From positions 310,001-374,000 of the IMG/VR virus record IMGVR_UViG_3300027899_000001: DNA of 64,000 bases, one strand, 5' to 3'. Each line of letters opens with the position of its first letter. Position 1 is the stretch's first letter. The notes beneath the pieces were generated by a model, which saw only the letters and a list, made by a program, of their open reading frames with translations, did not search any database and had not been told where the DNA came from. The position numbers and the translations under genes were made by a program. Positions 25,970 through 50,262 of the stretch are shown here, piece after piece.

Positions 25970-26082
25970 ACTGAGAAAATTTAGAAGAATAAATTGCCGC
26001 GCCATTGCGGCTATTTCCCCTTATTATTATTTGGCGGGGAAATTCAGAATCGAACCGATGTAATTCTTACAGTTACTACAGT
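25970..26082 (-). ncRNA. YrlA-type Y RNA (Ro-binding stem plus permuted tRNA-like domain)
   Basis: ACTG-T-AG/CT-CAGT ends; T-arm TCGG-TTCGATT-CTGA; loop-closed acceptor TTTCCCC-GCCA..GGGGAAA; D-like arm GCCGC..GCGGC. Confidence 0.8.
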
Positions 26083-28441: not shown

Positions 28442-29262
28442 TCGTAAAAAGGCATTTTAACTTTACAAATCTTTCTAATTTTCGCTTCAGTAATTCCATA
28501 ATGCATAGACATACAAACAGTTCCATCTATTCTTTTTGGAAATCCTTTTAATGATCTTATATCGTTATCTGATGCATTAAAATCTTCTTTTACATATTCA
28601 GGAAATCCTATGCATGATTGTATAGTTCCTGGAACACAAAAATTTCCATACACATGGTGAAATTTAATATATTCAGGAAGTTTTTTATATTTTGGATAAG
28701 TATTTCTAACACAATATAAATTTACTTGACCTTGTACTGTAATGCTTAAATCTTTATTTATAGTATAATCAATAATATTCATTTCTTTAAGCCAATCTTT
28801 AATCTTTTTAATGATTCCTATACCCATGTCTTGAATAGGATCAGTATCTTCAGCAAATTTTTCATTAACTGATTCATTTATTTTTAATACATCAAAATAT
28901 TCGTCCCAAACTTCTATAGGGGCAGATCCATATGTATAATAATATCCTCCCGAATCTATATACCTTCTTGCTGTTATAGCGTTCTGCACATTATCTCCAA
29001 AATTAATTATTACTAAACTTAAAATATTTTTTTCTTTGTTTACTTCTTTAACTATACTAGTATTGCCTTTACGAATTCTTGCGGTGACCTTTTCAATATT
29101 TTCGTCAAAAATAATATCATTGTTTTTTTGATATAAATCTTGTTTAACTATAATTATATCTCCTTTCTTTATTCTCGTAAATTTAGATCCAATACCTAAA
29201 TCCCATATGGGATCAGTTCCTTGTTCAAATTTTTCATTTATATGTTCTTTTACTATTTTCAT
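28438..29262 (-). CDS. DPIxDMGIG-motif protein with two motif-headed domains
   Basis: Motif at N-terminus and internally (NEKFAEDTDPIQDMGIG). Confidence 0.8.
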   Translation of the reverse strand: MKIVKEHINEKFEQGTDPIWDLGIGSKFTRIKKGDIIIVKQDLYQKNNDIIFDENIEKVTARIRKGNTSIVKEVNKEKNILSLVIINFGDNVQNAITARRYIDSGGYYYTYGSAPIEVWDEYFDVLKINESVNEKFAEDTDPIQDMGIGIIKKIKDWLKEMNIIDYTINKDLSITVQGQVNLYCVRNTYPKYKKLPEYIKFHHVYGNFCVPGTIQSCIGFPEYVKEDFNASDNDIRSLKGFPKRIDGTVCMSMHYGITEAKIRKICKVKMPFYE

Positions 29263-29286
29263 ATATTCTATTTATCTAACAAAACA

Positions 29287-29316
29287 AAAGGCCAAGATTA
29301 TAAAACCTTGGCCTTT
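29287..29316 (-). terminator. Intrinsic terminator after long Y-like RNAs
   Basis: AAAGGCCAAG...CTTGGCCTTT plus T-run. Confidence 0.8.
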
Positions 29317-29325
29317 CAATATCGT

Positions 29326-29583
29326 CTGAGAAAAATTAGGAAGCGTGTTTTTATAAGTTGTCTCTTATGCTCTAACCTACTTATCAATCTGTCCTGTACG
29401 TGATTAAAAGACGCCTAAGACACCGCACCTTCGGGAATTACGGCCCTTTCGGGAAAATTGATGTTCAGAATCAAGAGCGCTGTCATAGTTTGAATTTATC
29501 TAGGTTGCCGAAATCCATCAGCTGGGTTTTAACTATGTTGCCATAGAAAAAAGGTTTCGAAGTACCGCTTGACCTTACTACAG
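29326..29583 (-). ncRNA. Long Y-like RNA (258 nt) with unknown multibranch insert
   Basis: CTGTAGTAAGG..TACTTCGAAACC 5' motif, TTCTCAG 3' motif, several GNRA-capped hairpins. Confidence 0.65.
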
Positions 29584-29600
29584 ATGTTGTTTAAAATATA

Positions 29601-29826
29601 ACTGAGAATTGTTGTTTTGTGCGTTTTAAGGAATTATCTTTCCGAAAATCGTTGCGGTGATTTTCAATACCGTGCTGTGTTGTGTAGGCCGAAGCCGCAA
29701 ACCTTGAGCGTTATTTAACTGATTTAATTGGCATTGCTGCCGATCAATAGTATGACTCTTTCGAGCCAGAAGTTGCCGAGGCAACGTTTTGTTGGTTTCG
29801 AAGTATCACAAAAACTTCACTACAGT
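29601..29826 (-). ncRNA. Long Y-like RNA (226 nt) with tetraloop-rich insert
   Basis: ACTGTAGTGAAG..TACTTCGAAACC; GGCTC-GAAA-GAGTC, GGCA-GCAA-TGCC, GGC-TTCG-GCC; TTCTCAGT. Confidence 0.65.
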
Positions 29827-29942
29827 TTTATTATTAAAAATTTTAAAGAACTTTTATATACTATATATGGATTTAAAAAGTATTAGTTTTATAACTTAAT
29901 GCATTTATTTCATTAATATATAAAATAAAAGTAGTAAGTTTT

Positions 29943-30518
29943 ATGATTAAAGAAGAAAAACATCATTATGTATATTTAACTACTAATCTTATCAATGGTA
30001 AACAATATATTGGTGATAGAACATGTAAATGTAATCCTGAAAATGATAAGTATTTAGGAAGTGGCAGACCATATTTTCAAAATGCTATTAAAGAATATGG
30101 AAAAAATAATTTTAGCAAACAAATACTTGAATGTTTTAATACAAGAGAAGAAGCTTTTAATGCCCAAGAAAAATATATTATACAATATAATACGCTTATT
30201 CCTAATGGATATAATATAAGTCCTAAAGGTGGCCATAATGTTAAAGAATGTTGGAGCAAAGAATCTAAAGAAAAATGCAGTAACACTAAAAAAGGAAAAA
30301 TTGGATATTGGAAAAATAAAAAATTATCAGAAGAACATATTAAACATTTAAAAGAAAATCATAAAGGAATGTTAGGAAAATATCATTCAGATGATTCTAA
30401 ATTACAACTTAGTAATTCAATGAAAATCAAAAATAACGGAAAAGAAACAGAAGAACATAAACAAAAAATAAAATTAAGTATGCAAAATTATTGGGCAAAA
30501 AAGAAATTAGTGCATTAA
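29943..30518 (+). CDS. GIY-YIG homing endonuclease with NUMOD3-like repeats
   Basis: YVYLTTNLINGKQYIG, YLGSG, GYNISPKGG; opposite strand. Confidence 0.85.
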   Translation: MIKEEKHHYVYLTTNLINGKQYIGDRTCKCNPENDKYLGSGRPYFQNAIKEYGKNNFSKQILECFNTREEAFNAQEKYIIQYNTLIPNGYNISPKGGHNVKECWSKESKEKCSNTKKGKIGYWKNKKLSEEHIKHLKENHKGMLGKYHSDDSKLQLSNSMKIKNNGKETEEHKQKIKLSMQNYWAKKKLVH

Positions 30519-30736: not shown

Positions 30737-31951
30737 TTATTTTATATTAAGTTGATATTTACAAAATTCTATCATTTTTTCATCTCCTGTATGTTTTCCT
30801 TCTGAATCAGACAATTTAATACAAGGTACCCATTCATCGTCAGGATCAGGTTTTGCTGCAATTAGTTTAATAACCATATTAAGTGGGTTAACTCCAACAT
30901 CATTAGATAAATTTGTGCCTATTCCCATTGCGCATTTAATTTCTTTATTACATGATTTTGTTAATTCAATTGCAAGATCAGGATTAAGATTATCTGAAAA
31001 AATTATAGTTTTATCATTGGGGTCAATTCCCATACTTTGATAATGTTTAATAACTTTTTCTGCAAAATGAAATGGATTTCCACTATCATGTCTTACACCA
31101 TCAAAAAGCTTTGAGAATTTTTTTCCAAATGATTTAAAGAATGATTCTGTTGTAAATGTATCTGTAAGAGCAATTCCAAGATCACCTTGATAAACATTTG
31201 ACCAGTTTTCAAGAGCTAAAAAATTTGCTTGTTTAAATCCATATTTTGCAGCATGAAACATAAACCATTCATGTGCATGAGTTCCTATTGGAGTAAGATT
31301 AAACATATGAGCAAAGTGTACATTAGAAGTTCCATTAAAATTATCTCTCATACTAAATGCTAAATCTTCTACAACTTCTTTTTGATTTTCATATGAATAT
31401 CTTCTACGAGTTCCAAATTCAGAAATCTTAACTCCATGATTATTAAATAATGCAGCTTTTTTTAGATTATTTTGTTCTCTTTCTACTCTTGAATTTATTT
31501 TTTCTCCCGTCATTTTAAAATACAATTCAGATATAAGAGCAAGAAGTGGAACTTCCCAAAGAATTGTACGATACCAGTAGCCTTCTACAGTTACTTGAAG
31601 TTCACTTCCATTTTGTATAACTCCAACTTCTGAAGGATTATATCTATATCCTGCCAAAAAATCAAAATACGCAGGATCGATATATTTACATTTAGTTTCA
31701 AAGAAGTGTTTTTCTGCAGTCAAAAGTTTAAGAGAAGACATATGAGAAATTTGTAATCTTAGTTCTTCTGCAAATCCTTCTGGAAAATTTACTTTTGAAC
31801 GAACTATTAATGCATATTTAACTTTTGCTCTTGGAAAAAGTTTTAACACTGCATTCATCATACTAAATTTATAAAGATCGTTATCGAGTATTGATGTAAT
31901 TATAGGTTCCATTTTATATTTTTTTAGCATGAAAATAAGTGACTCCATCAA
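30737..31951 (-). CDS. pncB: Nicotinate phosphoribosyltransferase
   Basis: SILDNDLYKFSM, EFGTRRR, GTHAHEW, LTDT, GVRHDSG, KLSDSEGK. Confidence 0.95.
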   Translation of the reverse strand: MMESLIFMLKKYKMEPIITSILDNDLYKFSMMNAVLKLFPRAKVKYALIVRSKVNFPEGFAEELRLQISHMSSLKLLTAEKHFFETKCKYIDPAYFDFLAGYRYNPSEVGVIQNGSELQVTVEGYWYRTILWEVPLLALISELYFKMTGEKINSRVEREQNNLKKAALFNNHGVKISEFGTRRRYSYENQKEVVEDLAFSMRDNFNGTSNVHFAHMFNLTPIGTHAHEWFMFHAAKYGFKQANFLALENWSNVYQGDLGIALTDTFTTESFFKSFGKKFSKLFDGVRHDSGNPFHFAEKVIKHYQSMGIDPNDKTIIFSDNLNPDLAIELTKSCNKEIKCAMGIGTNLSNDVGVNPLNMVIKLIAAKPDPDDEWVPCIKLSDSEGKHTGDEKMIEFCKYQLNIK

Positions 31952-32381
31952 TTTCTGTCATATCAAGAATTTTAAATTGATATGCACTAAATAATGCTGT
32001 TACAATTCTTGGTGTTAACGATCTATCAATTTTATTATCTAATAAATTAAATATAACATCTATAAGCTTTCCATATAATATATGAGTTTTTAAACTCAAC
32101 ATAGGTTTACTTGCTATAAATTTTCCATATACATAAGTATTCTTTTTTAAAAGATTATTAAAATCTTTAATAGTATCGTCTAAATATTTAATTTCATTTA
32201 ATTTTTTAAGATGAACAAGCGTTTTAATTCCTTTTAGTTCATCTTTATCATAGAAATAAAAATGTTTTCCCGAAAGAAATAAAACTTTTTCATCTTTAAC
32301 TTTTTTATGTTTTTGCACATATGCATGCATAACATGATCATATGTTTCATCTTTATATTGAATATCATTAAAACTTTTCAT
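31914..32381 (-). CDS. Hypothetical protein
   Basis: ORF track. Confidence 0.55.
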   Translation of the reverse strand: MKSFNDIQYKDETYDHVMHAYVQKHKKVKDEKVLFLSGKHFYFYDKDELKGIKTLVHLKKLNEIKYLDDTIKDFNNLLKKNTYVYGKFIASKPMLSLKTHILYGKLIDVIFNLLDNKIDRSLTPRIVTALFSAYQFKILDMTEIDGVTYFHAKKI

Positions 32382-32383
32382 TA

Positions 32384-32749
32384 TTATCTTATTCTAAATG
32401 TATCAAAAAATGTTCTAAACGATAGTCTTTTTTTCAAAATTATTGTTTCAGATACGTATTGAGTATCATTTTCATAATATTTTGTTCCTTTAGGAATTAT
32501 GAATTTAAATACAGTTAAGTAAGAATGAGCATCATCTGCCGCAATTTTAAAACTTTTATATGAATGATAGCCTATGTTAATAGAAACTTGATCATAATAA
32601 AAAGTAGCATCAAATTCTACTTTTTTATTTAAAAGATTTTTAGTATATTGAAAATCTGTAAACCAAGATATTCCTCTTCTAGTCATAGTTTTATAACAAA
32701 CTATATCTTTTTTTGCTGTTTTAAGAACATTTTTTCCAGTAAAACACAT
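32384..32749 (-). CDS. Hypothetical phage protein
   Basis: TAKKDIVCYK...GYHSY...FIIPKGTKYY. Confidence 0.6.
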   Translation of the reverse strand: MCFTGKNVLKTAKKDIVCYKTMTRRGISWFTDFQYTKNLLNKKVEFDATFYYDQVSINIGYHSYKSFKIAADDAHSYLTVFKFIIPKGTKYYENDTQYVSETIILKKRLSFRTFFDTFRIR

Positions 32750-32760
32750 ATTTTTAATTT

Positions 32761-33665
32761 TTAAAAGATTAGACTTCCTTCATCATCCCAACGACAATAT
32801 AATTTACTATTTTCTCTTAAGATAACATATTTAAGAGATTCGTTATTGCCTTTAGACATACAATCATCATCAATAACAACTGACATTCCATTTATAGAAT
32901 AAACTTTTGCACCAAACGGAAGAGTATAAAGAAATTCACCATTTCCCGCCTTTTTAGGAAACATTCTCTCAGTTCCTATATATGCATTTTCTCCTGTAAT
33001 ATATTTCTTAATAGCACTTATAGTTTCGTCTTTACATGCATTTTCTTTAACCCATTCACCTTCGTCATTTATAATAAATCCATCTTTATCTAACTCATAA
33101 TATATTTTTCTAAAAGTAACTTGATTTGCACCAAGAAATTTACATCTAGCTATAATTTCTTTTGGAGTATGATTATCATATTCTTTTAACATATTAAGAC
33201 TTAAACGAATATTAAATCCTCGTGATTTAAGTAAAGAAATTAATTCTGATAAGTTAAATTTTAATTTTTTAGAAACTCCAATTATATTTAAATTATTTTC
33301 ATCAGAAAAAATATCAGCAACAGAAAGACTTATCGTATTTACTTGAAGTTTTTGTAATAATCAATATTATCATCATCTAATAATACTCCAGTAGTTTGTA
33401 ACTCAACATTAGGAAATGGATAATTTAAATCTTTAAATAAAACAGATAAAACTTTTAAGAAATTTGTATTTTGCAAAGCTTCTCCTGTTCCTGTAAGAAT
33501 ACAAGTATTTACTCCATTCATTACAGCATACTTAATACGTTTTTCTATTTGAATATACATAAAAGTATCTTCATATGGAGAATCATGCATTCTACTTACA
33601 CAAAATGGACATTTATTTACACAACTTTTTGTAGGAACTACGATAGAAATTGTCTAAATGTTCAT
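32761..33665 (-). pseudogene. Radical SAM protein interrupted by TAG at codon 4 and a 1-nt frameshift near 33360
   Basis: MNI*TISIVVPTKSCVNKCPFCVSRMH (CxxxCxxC), LTGTGE, ELQTTG; continues in the -1 frame LQKLQVNTISLSV into ORF 32761..33192. Confidence 0.75.
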
Positions 33666-33731
33666 ATATTAATTATTATTGTGTAAATATAATACTAATT
33701 TCTGAATTAAAAAAATATTTTGCTATTTATT

Positions 33732-34382
33732 TTAAATATTTCCTATAAAAGAAAGTGTAAGAGAATCTACATAATAAACTTTAGCTTGTGTAAAAGCTTC
33801 TATAGTTTCTGACAAATCTGAATTTATTGATTTACACGCATCTTCAATAACATATGTATTAAAACCTTCCATTGCTGCATCTATTGCAGTTTCTTTCACA
33901 CAATAATCTAGAGCTAAACCACATACGTAAACTTCAACTACATTTCTTTCATTAAGAAAATCTTGAAGTTTTTTAGGAGCATCTGGATTTATTATTTTTG
34001 ATCTATCAAATGCACTATAAACATGATTATTCCTTTCCATGCCTTTTTTAAAGATATAAAAATCTTTTTTGCATTTTGATAAATTCAGATCTGGATGAAA
34101 TGAAGCACCTAATGTATCTGCTACACAATGATCAGGCCAAAGAATATCTTTTTCTCCATTTTCTCTTACGTAACTATCGTAAACAGAAGCTCCGGGATGT
34201 TGTGAGGCGAAAGCATCCATTTCTGGATCATGCCAATCTTGTGTAAATATAACTAAATCAAATCTTTCAAGGAGATCATTAACTACGGGTACAATTTTGT
34301 CTCCATCTGGTACTGCTAGTGATCCTCCAGGGCAAAAATCTCTTTGCAAATCGATCACTATTAATGCTTTTTTCTTTATCAT
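33732..34382 (-). CDS. pncA: Nicotinamidase
   Basis: VIDLQRDFCPGGSLAV, TQDWH, WPDHCV, GLALDYCVKETA. Confidence 0.95.
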   Translation of the reverse strand: MIKKKALIVIDLQRDFCPGGSLAVPDGDKIVPVVNDLLERFDLVIFTQDWHDPEMDAFASQHPGASVYDSYVRENGEKDILWPDHCVADTLGASFHPDLNLSKCKKDFYIFKKGMERNNHVYSAFDRSKIINPDAPKKLQDFLNERNVVEVYVCGLALDYCVKETAIDAAMEGFNTYVIEDACKSINSDLSETIEAFTQAKVYYVDSLTLSFIGNI

Positions 34383-34538
34383 ATCATCTTATAGTTTGAA
34401 TTTCATATTCATCATATCCATCTCTTGATTCATCTGAATCTATACATACAATTTCTAATCCAAATGATTGTAAAGCGTCTGATATATTGTCTACAATTTC
34501 ATCAGCTCTATCATCATAATCTACTCTAAATTTTGATT

Positions 34539-35474
34539 TCATAATTCTTCCTTTTTATTTTTAACATATCTATTGTATATACTATTTTCATTTTCTATTA
34601 TATCGTGTCTATATATATTGACAGGATTATTTCTTTTGAATTGAGATTTTAAATGTCGTTGAATGACAGAGTGTTGACGCATTTTATTAATTTCATCCAT
34701 ATATACTGCATTAACAGTTGGTGAATGTTTTTCAATAAAGTCTAAATATTCTTTAAGTATTCTATCAACTTCTTTATAACCATCTCTAGAATTTCCTGTC
34801 CAGTCTGGCATTATTTGTCCAAGATCTCCAAGATTTGTAACTCCAAGGCCATCAGTTGCAAGTGCAGTTATCGTATTTATTATTGTACTTCCTGCTTCAT
34901 AATTTCCAGCATATTCATTCATAGTTAACCATTCTGCCATATCATATACTTCTGTTTTCCAAAGATTTTGTATCATACCATAATCACCTACATCACCATG
35001 AAGAGTCCAAAAACCAAGAAGAAATTCTGTATAATTATCAGTAGAAAGAACTATTCCACGATGATATGAAGCTAAATCATACAAATAAATCATACGCAGT
35101 CTTGCTTTAAGATTTCCATTACGTATACGACTTGATGAACCTTCAGGATTAGGCGCATGAAACAGCATATTAGATTCCATTTTGGAATACATAAAATTAT
35201 ATTCTTCTTCAACGCTATGCTCTAAGAATTTTGTACAAAATACTTTTCCTGTTAATTTGGCTCTTTCTAATTCTTCTGGTTGATTTGAACTTACTGGCAA
35301 ACTTCTTCCTATAAGTGGAATATTTAATTCATCACAAACTGGTCTAGCAAGTGCTGCGCAAAGACAACTATCTATTCCACCTGAAATCCCTATAATAAGA
35401 GACTTTATATTATTGTTTGTAATATACAGACTTAATTCTTTTCGAATATTCGATACTGCTATTTGATAATTCAT
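34539..35474 (-). CDS. nadE: NH3-dependent NAD synthetase
   Basis: GISGGIDS, NLKARLRM, STDNYTE, FWTLHGD, KTEVY. Confidence 0.9.
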   Translation of the reverse strand: MNYQIAVSNIRKELSLYITNNNIKSLIIGISGGIDSCLCAALARPVCDELNIPLIGRSLPVSSNQPEELERAKLTGKVFCTKFLEHSVEEEYNFMYSKMESNMLFHAPNPEGSSSRIRNGNLKARLRMIYLYDLASYHRGIVLSTDNYTEFLLGFWTLHGDVGDYGMIQNLWKTEVYDMAEWLTMNEYAGNYEAGSTIINTITALATDGLGVTNLGDLGQIMPDWTGNSRDGYKEVDRILKEYLDFIEKHSPTVNAVYMDEINKMRQHSVIQRHLKSQFKRNNPVNIYRHDIIENENSIYNRYVKNKKEEL

Positions 35475-35482
35475 ATTATTTT

Positions 35483-35716
35483 TTATTTACGTATTATCCA
35501 AAATAATAACCAAAGTATAGTCGTGGGTATCCAAATTGCCCAAGTAAATATTGAAAATTTTTCACTATTTTTTGCCCAACATAAAAATGTTAAAATAGCA
35601 GAAGTAGCACTCATTAAAAATAATACACCTGGATAAATAGGGATAAAAAGATTTCCTACTATTAAAATTACAGTAGTAATTATTAAAGCCATTGTGAAAT
35701 TTTCAAAAATTTTCAT
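35483..35716 (-). CDS. Membrane protein
   Basis: Hydrophobic ORF. Confidence 0.55.
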   Translation of the reverse strand: MKIFENFTMALIITTVILIVGNLFIPIYPGVLFLMSATSAILTFLCWAKNSEKFSIFTWAIWIPTTILWLLFWIIRK

Positions 35717-35743
35717 ATTTATTTGTGTTTAATTATTAAAAAA

Positions 35744-36247
35744 TTATAAATCATTTTCTTTGTGTTTACACCAAGTTAGATATTCATCTTGATCTCTTAT
35801 CCATTGTAATAATTCTGGATCAGTAACTTGTTCATGTTCTATTTTAGACCATAATTCGTTATCTCTTTCATTTTTATCATATTGATTAACGAAATATATT
35901 TTCTTAATTCCCGCTGCTATTATATTTTTCAAACATTCACTGCAAGGTTCAAGTATACAATAAAGTTCTGCTTCTTCAATAGCAATTCCATGTTTGGCTG
36001 CAAAATTAATAGCATTCATTTCAGCATGAACCTCATATTTTTTAGACCAATTATGATGGGCTTCTCTATCAGTTAGAAAATTATAATTAGGAAAATGATC
36101 ACAACAATTTTCAAATCCTTTAGGTGTCCCATTTATTCCCGTGGAAATAATTCTTCTATCATGAACAATAAGAGCTCCCACTTGTCTTGAGACACATTTA
36201 GATTCTTGTCCAAGTAAATATGCTGTTTTAAGAAAGAAATGTTTCAT
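35744..36247 (-). CDS. dCMP deaminase
   Basis: SKCVSRQVGA, HAEMNAI, PCSEC. Confidence 0.9.
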   Translation of the reverse strand: MKHFFLKTAYLLGQESKCVSRQVGALIVHDRRIISTGINGTPKGFENCCDHFPNYNFLTDREAHHNWSKKYEVHAEMNAINFAAKHGIAIEEAELYCILEPCSECLKNIIAAGIKKIYFVNQYDKNERDNELWSKIEHEQVTDPELLQWIRDQDEYLTWCKHKENDL

Positions 36248-48200: not shown

Positions 48201-48566
48201 TTAACCATGTTCCATTTGTGAGTCATATTCAATTGCTTCAATAACTGAAACTGTTATATCTTTTATATCATCTATTTCTTTTATTTCCTTTTCCCAAAAG
48301 TGATTTGATATAAGTCTAGAATCTAATTCTTCATAGTTTACAATTTCTGTATATCCTGCTCCATAACCACTTCTTTTATTATATTCTGCTCTTTGGCTTA
48401 TCCAATCATTTAGGGCGTCAATAAACATATCTCTTTTCATTTTTATTAAACAAAATTTATCGTCAGAATAATATCCATAATTACCTGGTAGCCATACATA
48501 ATCTTCATCTGCTAAAACTATTGTTAAACCATCAAAATTAAATGTTACTAATTCTTTTTCTTTCAT
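48201..48566 (-). CDS. Hypothetical protein
   Basis: ORF track. Confidence 0.55.
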   Translation of the reverse strand: MKEKELVTFNFDGLTIVLADEDYVWLPGNYGYYSDDKFCLIKMKRDMFIDALNDWISQRAEYNKRSGYGAGYTEIVNYEELDSRLISNHFWEKEIKEIDDIKDITVSVIEAIEYDSQMEHG

Positions 48567-49366
48567 GATATTAATTTTTTAAATTCTTCTATTTGTTTAT
48601 ATAATTTTTCTTTATTAATTTCATTTATAGGGTTAACCCATTTTATTCTAATAACTTTCCACTCATGCTGTAATAAAAAATCATCTTTTATTTTATCTTT
48701 TTCTTTTCGTTCTTCATGTTGTTTTCCATCTATTTCTAAAGCTATTTTTTTATCTACAAATGCAAAATCAATCCACCATCTATTAACTTTATAGTCTCTA
48801 TGCCATCCAGTTATATTTTCATTTTCAAATAAAGATATAAAGTATTTTTCAGGATATGATGGCGCATTATCTTTTCTAGATTTCCATCCTATAAAAGTTC
48901 CGTTTGCAATTCTTTCGTGTGCTTTATCAGAAATCTTTTTCTTAGCAGATTCACTACAACCATGGTGTTTTCTTGCACATTCTCTAGAACAATATATTCG
49001 CCTTTTATATCTTGTTTTATATTCTTTTTTACATTCAGGACATATTTTTTGAATATATTCTAATGATAATATATCAGTTTCATGCTGTTTATACCTTAGA
49101 GTTTTTCCTATTTTTTCTTTAGTTTCTTTACTTAATATACGTTTTTTATTGTTGAAAGAATTTGAACAGCTTTTAGAACAAAAAGTACTATAGCGATGTT
49201 TATAATCAAAACCAACATTACAATTTTTACATTTTTTAGGAGCTTTATTATATTCAGCTATTCTTTTTTGTTTTAATAATGATAGTTTTTCTCTTCCTTT
49301 TTTAAATGCATTTCTTGCATTTTCTTGATGTTTTAATGAACCTTGATAATTTTTATCTTTAGACAT
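48563..49366 (-). CDS. Free-standing DUF559-like endonuclease
   Basis: Cys repeats; WWIDFAF..IALEIDGKQH. Confidence 0.8.
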   Translation of the reverse strand: MSKDKNYQGSLKHQENARNAFKKGREKLSLLKQKRIAEYNKAPKKCKNCNVGFDYKHRYSTFCSKSCSNSFNNKKRILSKETKEKIGKTLRYKQHETDILSLEYIQKICPECKKEYKTRYKRRIYCSRECARKHHGCSESAKKKISDKAHERIANGTFIGWKSRKDNAPSYPEKYFISLFENENITGWHRDYKVNRWWIDFAFVDKKIALEIDGKQHEERKEKDKIKDDFLLQHEWKVIRIKWVNPINEINKEKLYKQIEEFKKLIS

Positions 49367-49880: not shown

Positions 49881-49945
49881 ATTTATGGCTGGTGATTTGA
49901 ATCCCATTTAATCGTTCTACCTTAACGAACCATATTTTTTATTTG

Positions 49946-50026
49946 CTGCCCTGAGTGGATTCGAACCACTATCCCAAGTTTCAAAGACTCAGATAATTAA
50001 CTTTCGCACCTTTATACGACAGGGCA
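49946..50026 (-). tRNA. trnQ-TTG: tRNA-Gln(TTG) with small GC-GAAA-GT D-loop insertion
   Basis: Acceptor TGCCCTG/CAGGGCA, G73, loop CT-TTG-AA. Confidence 0.7.
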
Positions 50027-50030
50027 ATAA

Positions 50031-50100
50031 ACTGAGAAATTCGGTTAGAGCATTTTTTCTAATTTCCAGGTTTCGAAGTATCTCTTTACCTTACTACAGT
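50031..50100 (-). ncRNA. Short Y-like RNA
   Basis: ACTG-T-AG/CT-CAGT, GGTAAAGAG/CTCTAACC, TACTTCGAAACC. Confidence 0.7.
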
Positions 50101-50184: not shown

Positions 50185-50262
50185 GTTGAGAAATGTGGAG
50201 TGAGTGTCTTTTTTATTAGATTTGCATGTCTTTTACGAAGTAACTCATTTCCTTACTACAAC
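50185..50262 (-). ncRNA. Short Y-like RNA
   Basis: GTTG-T-AG/CT-CAAC, GGAAATGAGT/ACTCACTCC, TACTTCG. Confidence 0.7.

What the first reader, a model, noticed from the sequence alone, without database searches (positions are those of the whole stretch)
29601..29826. 226-nt Y-like RNA with a different tetraloop-rich module, in tandem with the first
Seen: Ro-type ends enclosing at least five short hairpins capped by GAAA, GCAA, TTCG, CTCG or GGAA loops. The insert is unrelated in sequence to its neighbour, and a boxA-like site lies just upstream. Inference: a second distinct effector domain; the phage may use Ro60 as a common chassis for interchangeable RNA modules.
Basis: partly seen in the sequence, partly recalled or inferred. 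Interest (0 to 1): 0.72.

Follow-up and report, generated by a model that had tools for sequence, protein, structure and literature searches.

The report
Large Y-like RNA in jumbo phage
This is a real 224-nt structured non-coding RNA gene on the minus strand of a 405-kb freshwater jumbo phage; it shares a conserved bulged end-stem with five other RNAs in the genome (one beside the phage's Ro60 gene, one carrying a tRNA-like domain), so it is most likely an unusually large Y RNA that gives Ro60 a different RNA module.

Summary
The element is real but reads on the MINUS strand (RNA 5' end 29825, 3' end 29602), the strand of the TROVE/Ro60 gene and all 39 tRNAs. It has a conserved "chassis". This is a 7-bp end stem with two invariant bulged U's (CUGUAGUGA / UUCUCAG), an upper stem, and a junction motif AUACUUCGAA. 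The chassis encloses a 171-nt insert of six hairpins, four of them capped by CUCG, GAAA, GCAA and UUCG.

The same chassis occurs six times in this phage and in at least 60 distinct copies in related phage contigs. Covariation in the stem is strong. A minimal copy lies 0.14-1.6 kb upstream of the Ro60 gene, same strand, in all nine Ro60 loci examined. Other copies carry a circularly permuted tRNA-like insert, the hallmark of bacterial YrlA Y RNAs.

Orthologues of this particular insert exist, and their hairpins covary. The insert is unrelated to that of its tandem neighbour. The two appear to be co-transcribed from a conserved upstream block that includes the boxA-like GTTCTTTAA, ending at a strong terminator.

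Ro60 binding, transcript ends and the insert's partner are untested: no RNA-seq run was listed and the complex prediction was not run. Verdict: a new, oversized variant of phage Y-like RNA. The modular-chassis idea is supported by comparison but not proven.

The parts
29602..29825 (-). u2: the 224-nt Y-like RNA of the finding (RNA position i = 29826 - window coordinate)
   Evidence: Conserved 5' CUGUAGUGA and 3' UUCUCAG ends. Orthologues in other phage and metagenome contigs.
29817..29825 (-). 5' strand of the terminal stem, CUGUAGUGA; U4 and U7 are invariant single-base bulges
   Evidence: Family-wide covariation of pairs 1, 2 and 5.
29602..29608 (-). 3' strand of the terminal stem, UUCUCAG
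29807..29815 (-). 5' strand of the upper stem (G UUUUUGUG)
   Evidence: Pairs with 29614-29621. Conserved in the u2 class, with a G-C to A-U change in subclass B. The equivalent helix covaries across the family.
29614..29621 (-). 3' strand of the upper stem (CACAAAAC)
29797..29806 (-). Junction motif AUACUUCGAA (CGAA = 29797-29800)
   Evidence: G-W-UAC-W-UCG is present in all 60 family copies, partly forced by the search pattern. CGAA occurs in 14 of 60, including u1, u2 and u3. CGAA is a validated Ro60 determinant in phage phiLo Yrl2 (PMC12135203).
29622..29627 (-). 3' junction A-run, AAAACG
   Evidence: An A-run followed by NYRC precedes the 3' strand of the upper stem in 40 of 60 copies.
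29772..29785 (-). H1: GUUGC-CUCG-GCAAC
   Evidence: Stem fully covaried in orthologues (GUCUC/GAGAC, GCUUC/GAAGA). Loop stays CUCG or UUCG.
29753..29768 (-). H2: UGGCUC-GAAA-GAGUCA (one G-U pair)
   Evidence: Covaried (CAUUGC/GCAAUG, CAUUAC/GUAAUG, CAUCGC/GCGAUG). Loop swaps between GNRA and UUCG.
29724..29747 (-). H3: hairpin with internal loop, GGCA-GCAA-UGCC tip
   Evidence: Loop is GNRA in four of five subclass-A sequences, and the closing pair covaries. H3 is absent in L074.
29674..29709 (-). Conserved core: GCU/AGC helix enclosing UUUG(C)GGC-UUCG-GCCUACA
   Evidence: This is the most conserved part of the insert in subclasses A and B. Tip pairs covary (C-G to U-A or A-U) in the 10-sequence alignment.
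29655..29672 (-). H5: CGGU...ACCG with a 10-nt loop
   Evidence: Changes from CGGU/ACCG to AGGU/ACCU. A possible pseudoknot with 29644-29665 is unresolved.
29630..29643 (-). H6: GGAA-AGAUAA-UUCC
   Evidence: The stem covaries (CGAG/CUCG, GGAG/CUCC, UGAG/CUCA) and the loop is AGANAA. A hairpin of this type precedes the A-run in all large family members.
29584..29601 (-). 18-nt AU-rich spacer between u2 and u1
   Evidence: u2-class followed by u1-class (GGUAC type) tandem with a similar AU-rich spacer in L073, L075, L084 and probably L082.
29326..29583 (-). u1: tandem 258-nt paralogue with an unrelated insert
   Evidence: Same chassis. Its own orthologues are L057, L063 and L071.
29285..29318 (-). 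Intrinsic terminator (15-pair stem followed by UUUUGUUUUGUU)
   Evidence: It starts 8 nt after the u1 3' end.
29843..29851 (-). boxA-like box GTTCTTTAA
   Evidence: Conserved as AGTTCTTTGAA 10-20 nt upstream of every u2-class copy. It recurs on this strand ahead of tRNA clusters.
29854..29902 (-). Conserved upstream block: hairpin GCAUUAAGUU..AACUAAUAC plus U-run (29875-29902), then ATATATAGTATATAA (29854-29868)
   Evidence: Aligned upstream regions of 10 loci; coordinates. Read as the upstream terminator followed by a promoter region (inference).
36814..38517 (-). TROVE/Ro60-like protein gene (567 aa), the presumed protein partner
   Evidence: Pfam TROVE E = 4.7e-9. PDB 9L5Y/9KOP, phage phiLo Ro60, E = 5e-14. 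DTSGS MIDAS motif visible.
38896..38970 (-). Minimal family copy (75 nt), 379 nt upstream of the TROVE start codon
   Evidence: A syntenic copy is present in all other TROVE loci.
50032..50099 (-). u3: minimal copy (68 nt) immediately 3' of tRNA-Gln(CUG)
   Evidence: At the same position, relatives carry a copy with a permuted tRNA-like insert.
50186..50261 (-). Minimal copy (76 nt)
25971..26081 (-). Copy (111 nt) with a permuted tRNA-like insert: T-arm, acceptor-like stem with GCCA, D-arm-like hairpin
   Evidence: Covariance-model hit of 34.7 bits, E = 2e-4, not in the training set.

Best explanation
u2 is a phage-encoded Y-type RNA, a non-coding partner of the phage's Ro60 (TROVE) protein, read on the minus strand.

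Proposed steps:
1. It is co-transcribed with its tandem neighbour u1. Transcription starts in a conserved upstream block (TATA-rich box plus boxA-like GTTCTTTAA) and stops at the terminator at 29318-29285.
2. The precursor is cut in the 18-nt AU-rich spacer.
3. The 5' and 3' ends of each RNA pair into a conserved stem with two bulged U's, followed by an upper stem and the junction UACUUCGAA / AAAAC. This 'chassis' is the Ro60 docking site.
4. The 171-nt insert (six hairpins around a conserved UUCG-capped core) projects from the Ro60 ring. It serves as a module that recruits or occludes a specific partner, as the Deinococcus Y RNA tethers PNPase and as YrlA presents a tRNA mimic. The phage encodes no PNPase or RtcB, so the partner would be a host enzyme or an unidentified phage protein.

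Shown: strand, fold, family membership, conservation of the insert, linkage of the family to TROVE, and YrlA-type inserts on the same chassis.
Inferred: transcription unit, processing, Ro60 binding, and tether or gate function.
For: Strand and fold:
- GNRA/UNCG loops and G-U pairs occur only on the minus strand.
- There is a minus-strand terminator.
- All tRNAs and the TROVE gene are on the same strand.

Chassis:
- Six copies in this genome and 60-72 distinct copies in related contigs.
- Terminal pairs 1 and 2 are paired in 59/72 and 64/72 copies, against about 41 in shuffles (0/2000). All four Watson-Crick combinations occur.
- In 15 minimal copies, 94% of cells are paired and 9 of 15 pairs have compensatory changes. 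The covariation score is 0.39, against 0.165 shuffled (0/500) and at most 0.13 when the partners are slid.

Insert:
- Nine orthologues were found.
- In subclass A, 94% of cells are paired, 12 of 49 pairs are compensatory, and 0/500 shuffles reach the observed values.
- The core hairpin, H6 and the upper stem are kept in all 10 sequences.

Link to Ro60:
- The covariance model built from minimal copies finds a copy 0.14-1.6 kb upstream of TROVE, on the same strand, in all nine TROVE loci, including copies not used for training.
- Every contig at least 50% complete that carries the family encodes TROVE.
- The same chassis carries circularly permuted tRNA-like inserts. ARAGORN calls a tRNA on the rotated sequence, with the chassis as an 'intron'. 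This is the architecture described for YrlA (PMC4201824).
- CGAA sits at the stem/insert junction, as in phiLo Yrl1/2, where it contributes to Ro60 binding (PMC12135203).
- The protein has a TROVE domain, similarity to phiLo Ro60 and a MIDAS motif.
Against: - There is no transcript evidence. No RNA run was listed and only one DNA run holds the sequence.
- There is no binding evidence. Complex prediction did not fold the protein-RNA pair.
- u2 is 7.0 kb from TROVE, outside the 4-kb window used for bacterial Y RNAs.
- At 224 nt, it is about twice the size of any described Y RNA.
- The Rfam YrlA model finds nothing in the genome, and no Rfam family hits the region.
- The bacterial motif GNCGAAN0-1G is met only as UUCGAAAC. 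CGAA is present in only 14 of 60 family copies.
- The TROVE-adjacent synteny comes from one phage lineage (65-80% identical TROVE proteins). The nine loci are therefore not independent, and both TROVE and the RNAs sit in the same tRNA island.
- Several 'invariant' positions were imposed by my search patterns.
- The u2 structure was derived from the same five-sequence alignment on which it was scored.
Confidence: 0.7

Rival explanations
1. The family is a phage-specific class of structured RNAs whose conserved bulged stem is recognised by something other than Ro60. Candidates are a processing nuclease that punctuates the tRNA/ncRNA arrays, or another phage RNA-binding protein. On this view the proximity to TROVE only reflects that both lie in the tRNA island.
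For: Copies sit directly after tRNAs (50099 after tRNA-Gln, 26081 after tRNA-Lys). The TROVE linkage is inherited synteny in one lineage. The canonical Ro60 helix sequence GGUCCGA and the bacterial GNCGAAN0-1G motif are not matched, and the YrlA model gives no hit.
Against: A stem that serves only as a processing signal would not need 25 or more conserved positions plus a junction motif. A permuted tRNA-like domain attached through its anticodon stem to a long end-stem is so far known only from Ro60-bound YrlA RNAs (PMC4201824). A minimal copy with no insert is kept next to TROVE in every locus.
Confidence: 0.17
2. The element belongs to a mobile or self-splicing element associated with the adjacent GIY-YIG homing-endonuclease gene. 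It would be a group I-like intron or its remnant, rich in GNRA tetraloops.
For: A GIY-YIG/NUMOD3 ORF lies at 29943-30518, about 120 nt away. Group I introns are rich in GNRA loops and often carry such genes.
Against: The ORF is on the opposite strand. No Intron_gpI or other Rfam hit appears even at E <= 10. No interrupted host gene flanks the element. The same RNA with the same upstream block and terminator occurs in nine other contigs. The same chassis occurs as 58-85-nt minimal hairpins. Loops swap between GNRA and UUCG, which argues against tetraloop-receptor contacts.
Confidence: 0.03
3. The plus strand is the functional strand, read either as RNA or as the small ORFs 29728-29886(+) and 29626-29784(-), and the hairpins are incidental.
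For: The plus strand also folds, and sigma-70-like hexamers are found on it.
Against: The plus-strand MFE is no better than shuffles (z = -0.73). G-U pairs become A-C mismatches and the loops become UUUC, UUGC and CGAG. The promoter-like count is not above shuffles (3 found, 3.6 expected). Orthologues differ by indels that are not multiples of three and by paired compensatory changes. tRNA-like inserts, CCA ends and the terminator all read on the minus strand.
Confidence: 0.02

Closest known systems
Bacterial YrlA / YrlB Y RNAs (Salmonella, Mycobacterium; Rfam RF02553; Chen et al. 2014, PMC4201824)
   Same: The ends pair into a long stem, and a CGAA-containing motif sits on the 5' side where the stem opens. 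They are encoded on the same strand as Ro60, with several paralogues per genome processed from one precursor. Paralogues on the same chassis, here (25971-26081) and in sister phages, carry a permuted tRNA-like domain, as YrlA does.
   Different: u2 has no tRNA-like domain. It is 224 nt against about 80-130 nt. RF02553 gives no hit. The motif is UUCGAAAC rather than GNCGAAN0-1G. The stem has its own conserved sequence with two bulged U's. u2 lies 7 kb from Ro60.
Thermus phage phiLo Yrl1/Yrl2 with phiRo60 (PMC12135203; PDB 9L5Y, 9KOP)
   Same: Phage-encoded Ro60 plus more than one Y-like RNA, with a stem-bulge-stem layout and CGAA. The window's TROVE protein is detectably similar to phiRo60 (E = 5e-14). 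As with phiLo, this phage has no PNPase of its own, so a host effector is plausible.
   Different: phiLo has two small RNAs immediately upstream of Ro60. Here there are six copies spread over a 25-kb tRNA island, two of them with 170-200-nt structured inserts. No binding data exist here.
Deinococcus radiodurans Yrn1 (the Ro60-Y RNA-PNPase 'RYPER' tether)
   Same: The working model is the same: one end of the RNA docks on Ro60 and the other module engages an effector.
   Different: The effector module of u2 is unrelated in sequence and much larger, and its partner is unknown.
rrn-leader boxA antitermination sites (from memory: E. coli UGCUCUUUAACAA; Firmicutes GUUCUUUGAAAA)
   Same: The conserved box AGTTCTTTGAA / GTTCTTTAA upstream of u2-class genes and of tRNA clusters matches the boxA core. 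It precedes stable-RNA transcription units.
   Different: It is not known whether it lies in the transcript or in the promoter. NusB/NusE binding was not tested. The consensus is recalled from memory, not taken from a tool.

Membership tests
Y RNA (Ro60-associated ncRNA, general definition) | 5' and 3' ends base-pair into a long stem | tested here: met
   Terminal stem plus upper stem. Covariation in 72 copies and 15 minimal copies. Invariant but paired within the u2 class.
Y RNA (Ro60-associated ncRNA, general definition) | Conserved bulged helix in that stem (the Ro60 binding site; GGUCCGA / CUUGACC in animals) | tested here: inconclusive
   A conserved helix with two invariant bulged U's on the 5' strand exists. 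Its sequence (YUGUAGUAA / UUUCUCAR) is not the animal one. Whether Ro60 reads it is untested.
Y RNA (bacterial/phage) | GNCGAAN0-1G / CGAA motif near the 5' end at the stem-loop junction | tested here: inconclusive
   u2 has UUCGAAAC, with CGAA at 29797-29800 and U in place of the first G. CGAA is present in 14 of 60 family copies, and only UAC(U/A)UCG is constant.
Y RNA (bacterial/phage) | Encoded within about 4 kb of the Ro60 gene on the same strand (operational criterion of Chen et al. 2014) | tested here: not met
   u2 is on the same strand but 6,989 nt downstream of the TROVE stop codon. The criterion is met by the paralogue at 38896-38970 (379 nt upstream) and by a copy in each of eight other TROVE loci.
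Y RNA (general) | Physically bound by Ro60 | not testable with these tools
   Complex prediction did not fold protein-RNA pairs. No immunoprecipitation or RNA-seq data are available.
Y RNA (general) | Size about 80-130 nt | tested here: not met
   u2 is 224 nt between the conserved ends. Family copies range from 58 to 306 nt.
YrlA (Rfam RF02553) | Match to the covariance model at or above 69 bits | tested here: not met
   No hit in the whole phage genome at E <= 0.001. Nothing in 29200-29950 at E <= 10. None in relatives with tRNA-like copies either.
YrlA (Rfam RF02553) | tRNA-like domain with T- and D-arms, permuted so that a closed acceptor-like stem lies between them | tested here: not met
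   u2 has no T-loop or D-arm, and neither ARAGORN nor the Rfam tRNA model calls anything there. The feature is met in paralogue 25971-26081 (weakly) and in G002 and G003 copies.
Group I intron (RF00028) | Conserved P3-P7 core detectable by the covariance model; flanking exons | tested here: not met
   No hit at gathering threshold or at E <= 10. The flanks are a promoter-like block and a second family copy, not exons.
rrn-type boxA | boxA consensus in the leader transcript of a stable-RNA operon, bound by NusB/NusE | tested here: inconclusive
   The sequence match is conserved in 10 of 10 loci and recurs before tRNA clusters. Its position relative to the transcription start and any Nus binding are unknown.

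The most novel reading that the evidence does not exclude
A lineage of freshwater jumbo phages, probably infecting Bacteroidota, has turned the Y-RNA end-stem into a standard docking handle and multiplied it to 5-7 genes per genome. The inserts are exchangeable: none, a permuted tRNA mimic, or at least three unrelated classes of 150-250-nt folded domains. This would make phage Ro60 a programmable RNP hub. Each insert would direct Ro60, and whatever nuclease or repair enzyme it recruits, to a different target or decoy function during infection. u2 would be the first Y RNA whose effector module is a large, autonomously folded RNA domain.
Probability: 0.45. Interest if true: 0.85.

Novelty: new variant of a known kind. 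Interest (0 to 1): 0.72.

Why it matters
Y RNAs are known as small (about 100-nt) Ro60 partners with one or two types per organism. Their effector modules are understood in only two cases: the PNPase tether and the tRNA mimic.

Here one conserved stem is combined with many inserts within a single genome, and across at least 60 copies in related phages. Two of the inserts in this genome are larger than any described Y RNA. This amounts to a natural 'domain-swap' series.

The series makes testable which part of a Y RNA docks on Ro60 and what the variable part does. It also suggests that jumbo phages use Ro60 RNPs in several ways at once, alongside their large tRNA sets. If Ro60 binding fails, the family would still be a new, abundant class of structured phage RNAs with strong covariation support.

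Tried and rejected
- Rfam at gathering threshold on the window, and at E <= 10 on 29200-29950: only tRNAs and noise.
- The YrlA model on the whole genome: nothing.
- blastn of the locus against 50,697 GenBank phage records: no match.
- First pattern scans returned chance matches inside coding DNA (L003, L014-L016, L018). I discarded them after inspection.
- IMGVR_UViG_3300003860_000007 (L004/L005/L006) is an identical copy of this phage and gives no comparative information.
- Complex prediction (TROVE protein plus the 74-nt stretch holding the 68-nt minimal copy u3) was accepted but not folded. It is not evidence either way.
- Sequencing runs: no RNA run was listed. One DNA run is probably the source sample.
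- The covariance model of the minimal chassis does not span the 170-190-nt inserts. On u1 and u2 it recognises only the 5' half and mis-pairs the 3' half. Membership of u1 and u2 therefore rests on explicit end and stem matching.
- Reading the conserved GGUUUCGAAGUAYC (plus strand) as a T-arm was rejected, because no flanking stem fits on either strand.
- Reading the upstream box as a Bacteroidetes -7 element (TAnnTTTG) does not fit the spacing of the letters. This is left open.
- The genome-contig scan found the family only on two short MAG contigs, one of which also carries a TROVE gene 67% identical to the phage's. No chromosomal bacterial copy was found with that strict pattern.

Full report
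CONTEXT. The window is bases 310001-374000 of a 405,016-bp viral contig with direct terminal repeats. The only sequencing run that holds it is a freshwater metagenome. It is a jumbo phage of about 29% GC. The window holds 39 tRNA genes, all on the minus strand, and type-IX-secretion-type proteins that suggest a Bacteroidota host. It also holds a 567-aa TROVE/Ro60-like gene at 36814-38517 on the minus strand. The evidence for that gene is Pfam TROVE at E = 4.7e-9, similarity to the solved Ro60 of Thermus phage phiLo (9L5Y/9KOP, E = 5e-14), and a DTSGS MIDAS motif visible.

OBSERVATION. The stretch 29330-29830 is a GC island: 0.42-0.45 against 0.14-0.29 around it. It contains no credible ORF.

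Read on the minus strand, 29825 to 29602 is a 224-nt RNA. Its ends are CUGUAGUGA...UUCUCAG, and it has six hairpins:
- H1 29772-29785, loop CUCG
- H2 29753-29768, loop GAAA
- H3 29724-29747, loop GCAA
- a UUCG-capped core hairpin, 29683-29701
- H5 29655-29672
- H6 29630-29643, loop AGAUAA

Three hairpins of at least 4 bp capped by GNRA/YNCG compare with a mean of 0.2 in 2000 dinucleotide shuffles (0/2000 reach 3). The plus strand has one. Folding energy alone is weak evidence: z = -1.86 on the minus strand and -0.73 on the plus strand. Otherwise the description holds.

STRAND. Five lines of evidence agree on the minus strand:
- Tetraloop identities fit only that strand.
- G-U pairs in H2 and H3 would be A-C mismatches on the plus strand.
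- U-G and G-U pairs recur in the family alignments.
- A 15-pair terminator with a U-tract at 29318-29285 sits right after the neighbouring RNA.
- The tRNA-like inserts and CCA ends of paralogues read on this strand.

A FAMILY WITH ONE CHASSIS. The motif shared by this RNA (u2) and its neighbour (u1, 29326-29583) recurs at 50032-50099. That copy is a 68-nt RNA immediately 3' of tRNA-Gln(CUG). A looser search found six copies in this genome, all on the minus strand:
- 50186-50261
- 50032-50099
- 38896-38970
- u2
- u1
- 25971-26081

It also found 29 copies in five related contigs retrieved through their TROVE genes (70-80% identity). With further scans, the total reached 60-72 distinct copies of 58-306 nt.

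The consensus in RNA sense runs as follows. First comes YUGUAGUAA, then the 5' strand of an upper stem, then G-W-UAC-W-UCG-NN. The insert follows. After it come an A-run with NYRC, the 3' strand of the upper stem, 3-5 mostly A residues, and UUUCUCAR.

The terminal helix is 7 bp with U4 and U7 bulged. I defined 3' ends without constraining the last two bases. On that basis, pairs 1 and 2 are formed in 59/72 and 64/72 copies, against about 41 expected (0/2000 shuffles). C-G, U-A, G-C and A-U all occur. On 15 minimal copies, 94.1% of cells pair and 9 of 15 pairs have compensatory changes. The covariation score is 0.390, against 0.165 shuffled (0/500) and at most 0.131 when the partners are slid. 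A covariance model built from these copies recovers non-training copies, such as 25971-26081 at 34.7 bits.

Caveat: my patterns imposed part of the 'invariance' of the junction motif.

LINK TO Ro60. Three lines of evidence connect the family to Ro60.
(i) In this phage, a 75-nt insert-less copy lies 379 nt upstream of the TROVE start codon on the same strand. The model finds such a copy 0.14-1.6 kb upstream of TROVE in all eight other TROVE loci examined. These include a short MAG contig whose TROVE protein is 67% identical. This meets the operational criterion used to nominate bacterial Y RNAs: within 4 kb, same strand (PMC4201824).
(ii) Every contig at least 50% complete that carries the family encodes TROVE.
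(iii) In sister phages, the copy at the position of the 68-nt RNA carries a roughly 100-nt insert. From 5' to 3', that insert reads variable arm, T-arm, acceptor 3' strand with NCCA, a closing loop, acceptor 5' strand and D-arm. After rotating the sequence, ARAGORN calls a class-II tRNA with the chassis as an 'intron' in the anticodon loop. The copy at 25971-26081 in this window has the same layout, more weakly. A permuted tRNA mimic attached through its anticodon stem to a long end-stem is what defines YrlA Y RNAs (PMC4201824).

In addition, u1, u2 and the 68-nt copy carry CGAA at the stem/insert junction. That motif was used to find Yrl1/2 in phage phiLo and was shown there to contribute 3-4-fold to Ro60 binding (PMC12135203).

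Against: these loci are homologous, so they are not independent. CGAA is present in only 14 of 60 copies. The curated YrlA model finds nothing.

THE INSERT OF u2. It is unrelated to that of u1 and to any Rfam family. It is conserved, however. Pattern scans of viral and metagenome contigs gave nine further u2-class RNAs.

Subclass A (L082, L055, L073, L074) has the same order of hairpins. H1, H2, H3, H5 and H6 change by paired substitutions. H2 swaps between GNRA and UUCG caps, and some members add or lose a hairpin. On that alignment, 94.1% of cells pair and 12 of 49 pairs are compensatory. The covariation score is 0.239, against 0.101 shuffled (0/500) and at most 0.074 slid. There are only five sequences, and the structure was derived from the same alignment.

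Subclass B (L051, L065, L075, L080, L084) keeps the upper stem, the core UUUG-GG(N)C-UUCG-G(N)CC hairpin and H6, but has different peripheral hairpins.

The cap swapping argues that the tetraloops are structural caps rather than tertiary contacts. The conserved core and its flanking A/C-rich single strands are the best candidates for a binding site. A possible H-type pseudoknot (RNA 154-157/168-171 with 161-167/176-182) is not resolved.

TRANSCRIPTION UNIT. Upstream of all ten u2-class genes lies a conserved block. It consists of a hairpin plus U-run (here 29875-29902), ATATATA(A/G)T (29854-29868) and AGTTCTTTGAA (here GTTCTTTAA, 29843-29851). The block ends 10-20 nt before the RNA. The box recurs on the minus strand ahead of several tRNA clusters in the window. 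Whether it is transcribed or is part of a promoter cannot be decided without a 5' end.

In four other loci, the u2-class gene is followed after an AU-rich spacer by a u1-class gene. Here the pair ends at the terminator. Co-transcription and processing are therefore inferred, not shown.

FUNCTION. The phage encodes neither PNPase nor RtcB. The genes between the RNA pair and TROVE encode NAD-salvage enzymes and a TadA-like deaminase.

The most likely model follows Deinococcus Yrn1, YrlA and phiLo Yrl. The chassis docks on phage Ro60, and the insert recruits or blocks a host or phage factor. The insert-less copies would act only as gates or occupancy regulators.

I put 0.7 on 'Ro60-partner Y-type RNA' and above 0.9 on 'real, conserved, structured minus-strand ncRNA of this family'. 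I put roughly 0.4 on the specific tether role of the insert.

WHAT COULD NOT BE DONE. No RNA-seq run was listed. The complex predictor does not score protein-RNA pairs.

NOVELTY. Phage Ro60 genes and small phage Y-like RNAs are known: mycobacteriophages, CcrColossus, phage G and phiLo (PMC4201824, PMC12135203). TROVE in some jumbo phages has also been noted (PMC7824862). In the searchable literature I found no description of three things: a multi-copy family with one conserved stem and exchangeable inserts, Y-type RNAs of 200-300 nt, or this insert. I rate it a new variant of a known kind.

Noticed in passing
window 25971-26081 (-): A 111-nt family copy between tRNA-Lys and tRNA-Gly. Its insert is a permuted tRNA-like domain: T-arm UCGG-UUCGAUU-CUGA, an 8-bp acceptor-like stem with GCCA closed by a loop, and a D-arm-like hairpin. 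It is the phage's own YrlA-type RNA.
   Followed up: partly
window 49945-50026 (-) and 49881-49935 (-): Two uncalled tRNA-like genes in the array. One has a perfect T-arm, but ARAGORN accepts it only at a relaxed threshold, with a 4-base anticodon. The other is a mini tRNA-like with a 7-bp acceptor stem and a D-arm but no evident anticodon arm.
   Followed up: partly
window 43926-43999 (-): A tRNA with a CUA anticodon (amber suppressor; ARAGORN labels it 'Pyl'). This hints at stop-codon suppression or recoding in this phage.
   Followed up: no
window 29943-30518 (+): A GIY-YIG/NUMOD3 homing-endonuclease ORF. It is the only plus-strand gene nearby and is inserted just upstream of the u2 promoter block. 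Several DUF559/Vsr-like endonuclease ORFs sit between tRNA genes (41601-42257, 48563-49366).
   Followed up: partly
window minus strand: 51302, 50394, 46788, 24052, 17248, 13353, 13115 (5' ends): The boxA-like GTTCTTTRA box recurs in AT-rich intergenic DNA. It often follows a terminator hairpin and precedes tRNA or Y-like RNA clusters. It may be a shared signal for stable-RNA transcription units.
   Followed up: partly
G004:264809, G002:43055, G003:10955 (L034, L040, L047): A third class of large (273-304 nt) family members shares a conserved insert (CUAAGGUAGU.CCG..GCGAG..CCACGAA ... GUCAGGAGGA..AAUAAUCCGUAUA.ACUGUGAA). It has no Rfam match and is absent from this phage.
   Followed up: no
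L040:10713-10831 (-): In a related phage, a roughly 120-nt RNA has tmRNA/tRNA-like ends (GGGGGAG.../...CUCCCCCACCA) and an internal GAGAUACUUCGUAAC resembling the family's junction motif.
   Followed up: no
window 30737-36247 (-): An NAD-salvage cluster (NAPRTase, nicotinamidase-like isochorismatase, NAD synthase) and a TadA/dCMP-deaminase-like ORF lie between the u2/u1 pair and the Ro60 gene. The phage has no RtcB or PNPase.
   Followed up: partly
window 29644-29672 (-): Possible H-type pseudoknot in u2. Stem 1 (29655-29658 / 29669-29672) covaries. Stem 2 (29644-29650 / 29659-29665) shows only one-sided changes and competes with pairing between the U-run and the A-run around H6.
   Followed up: partly
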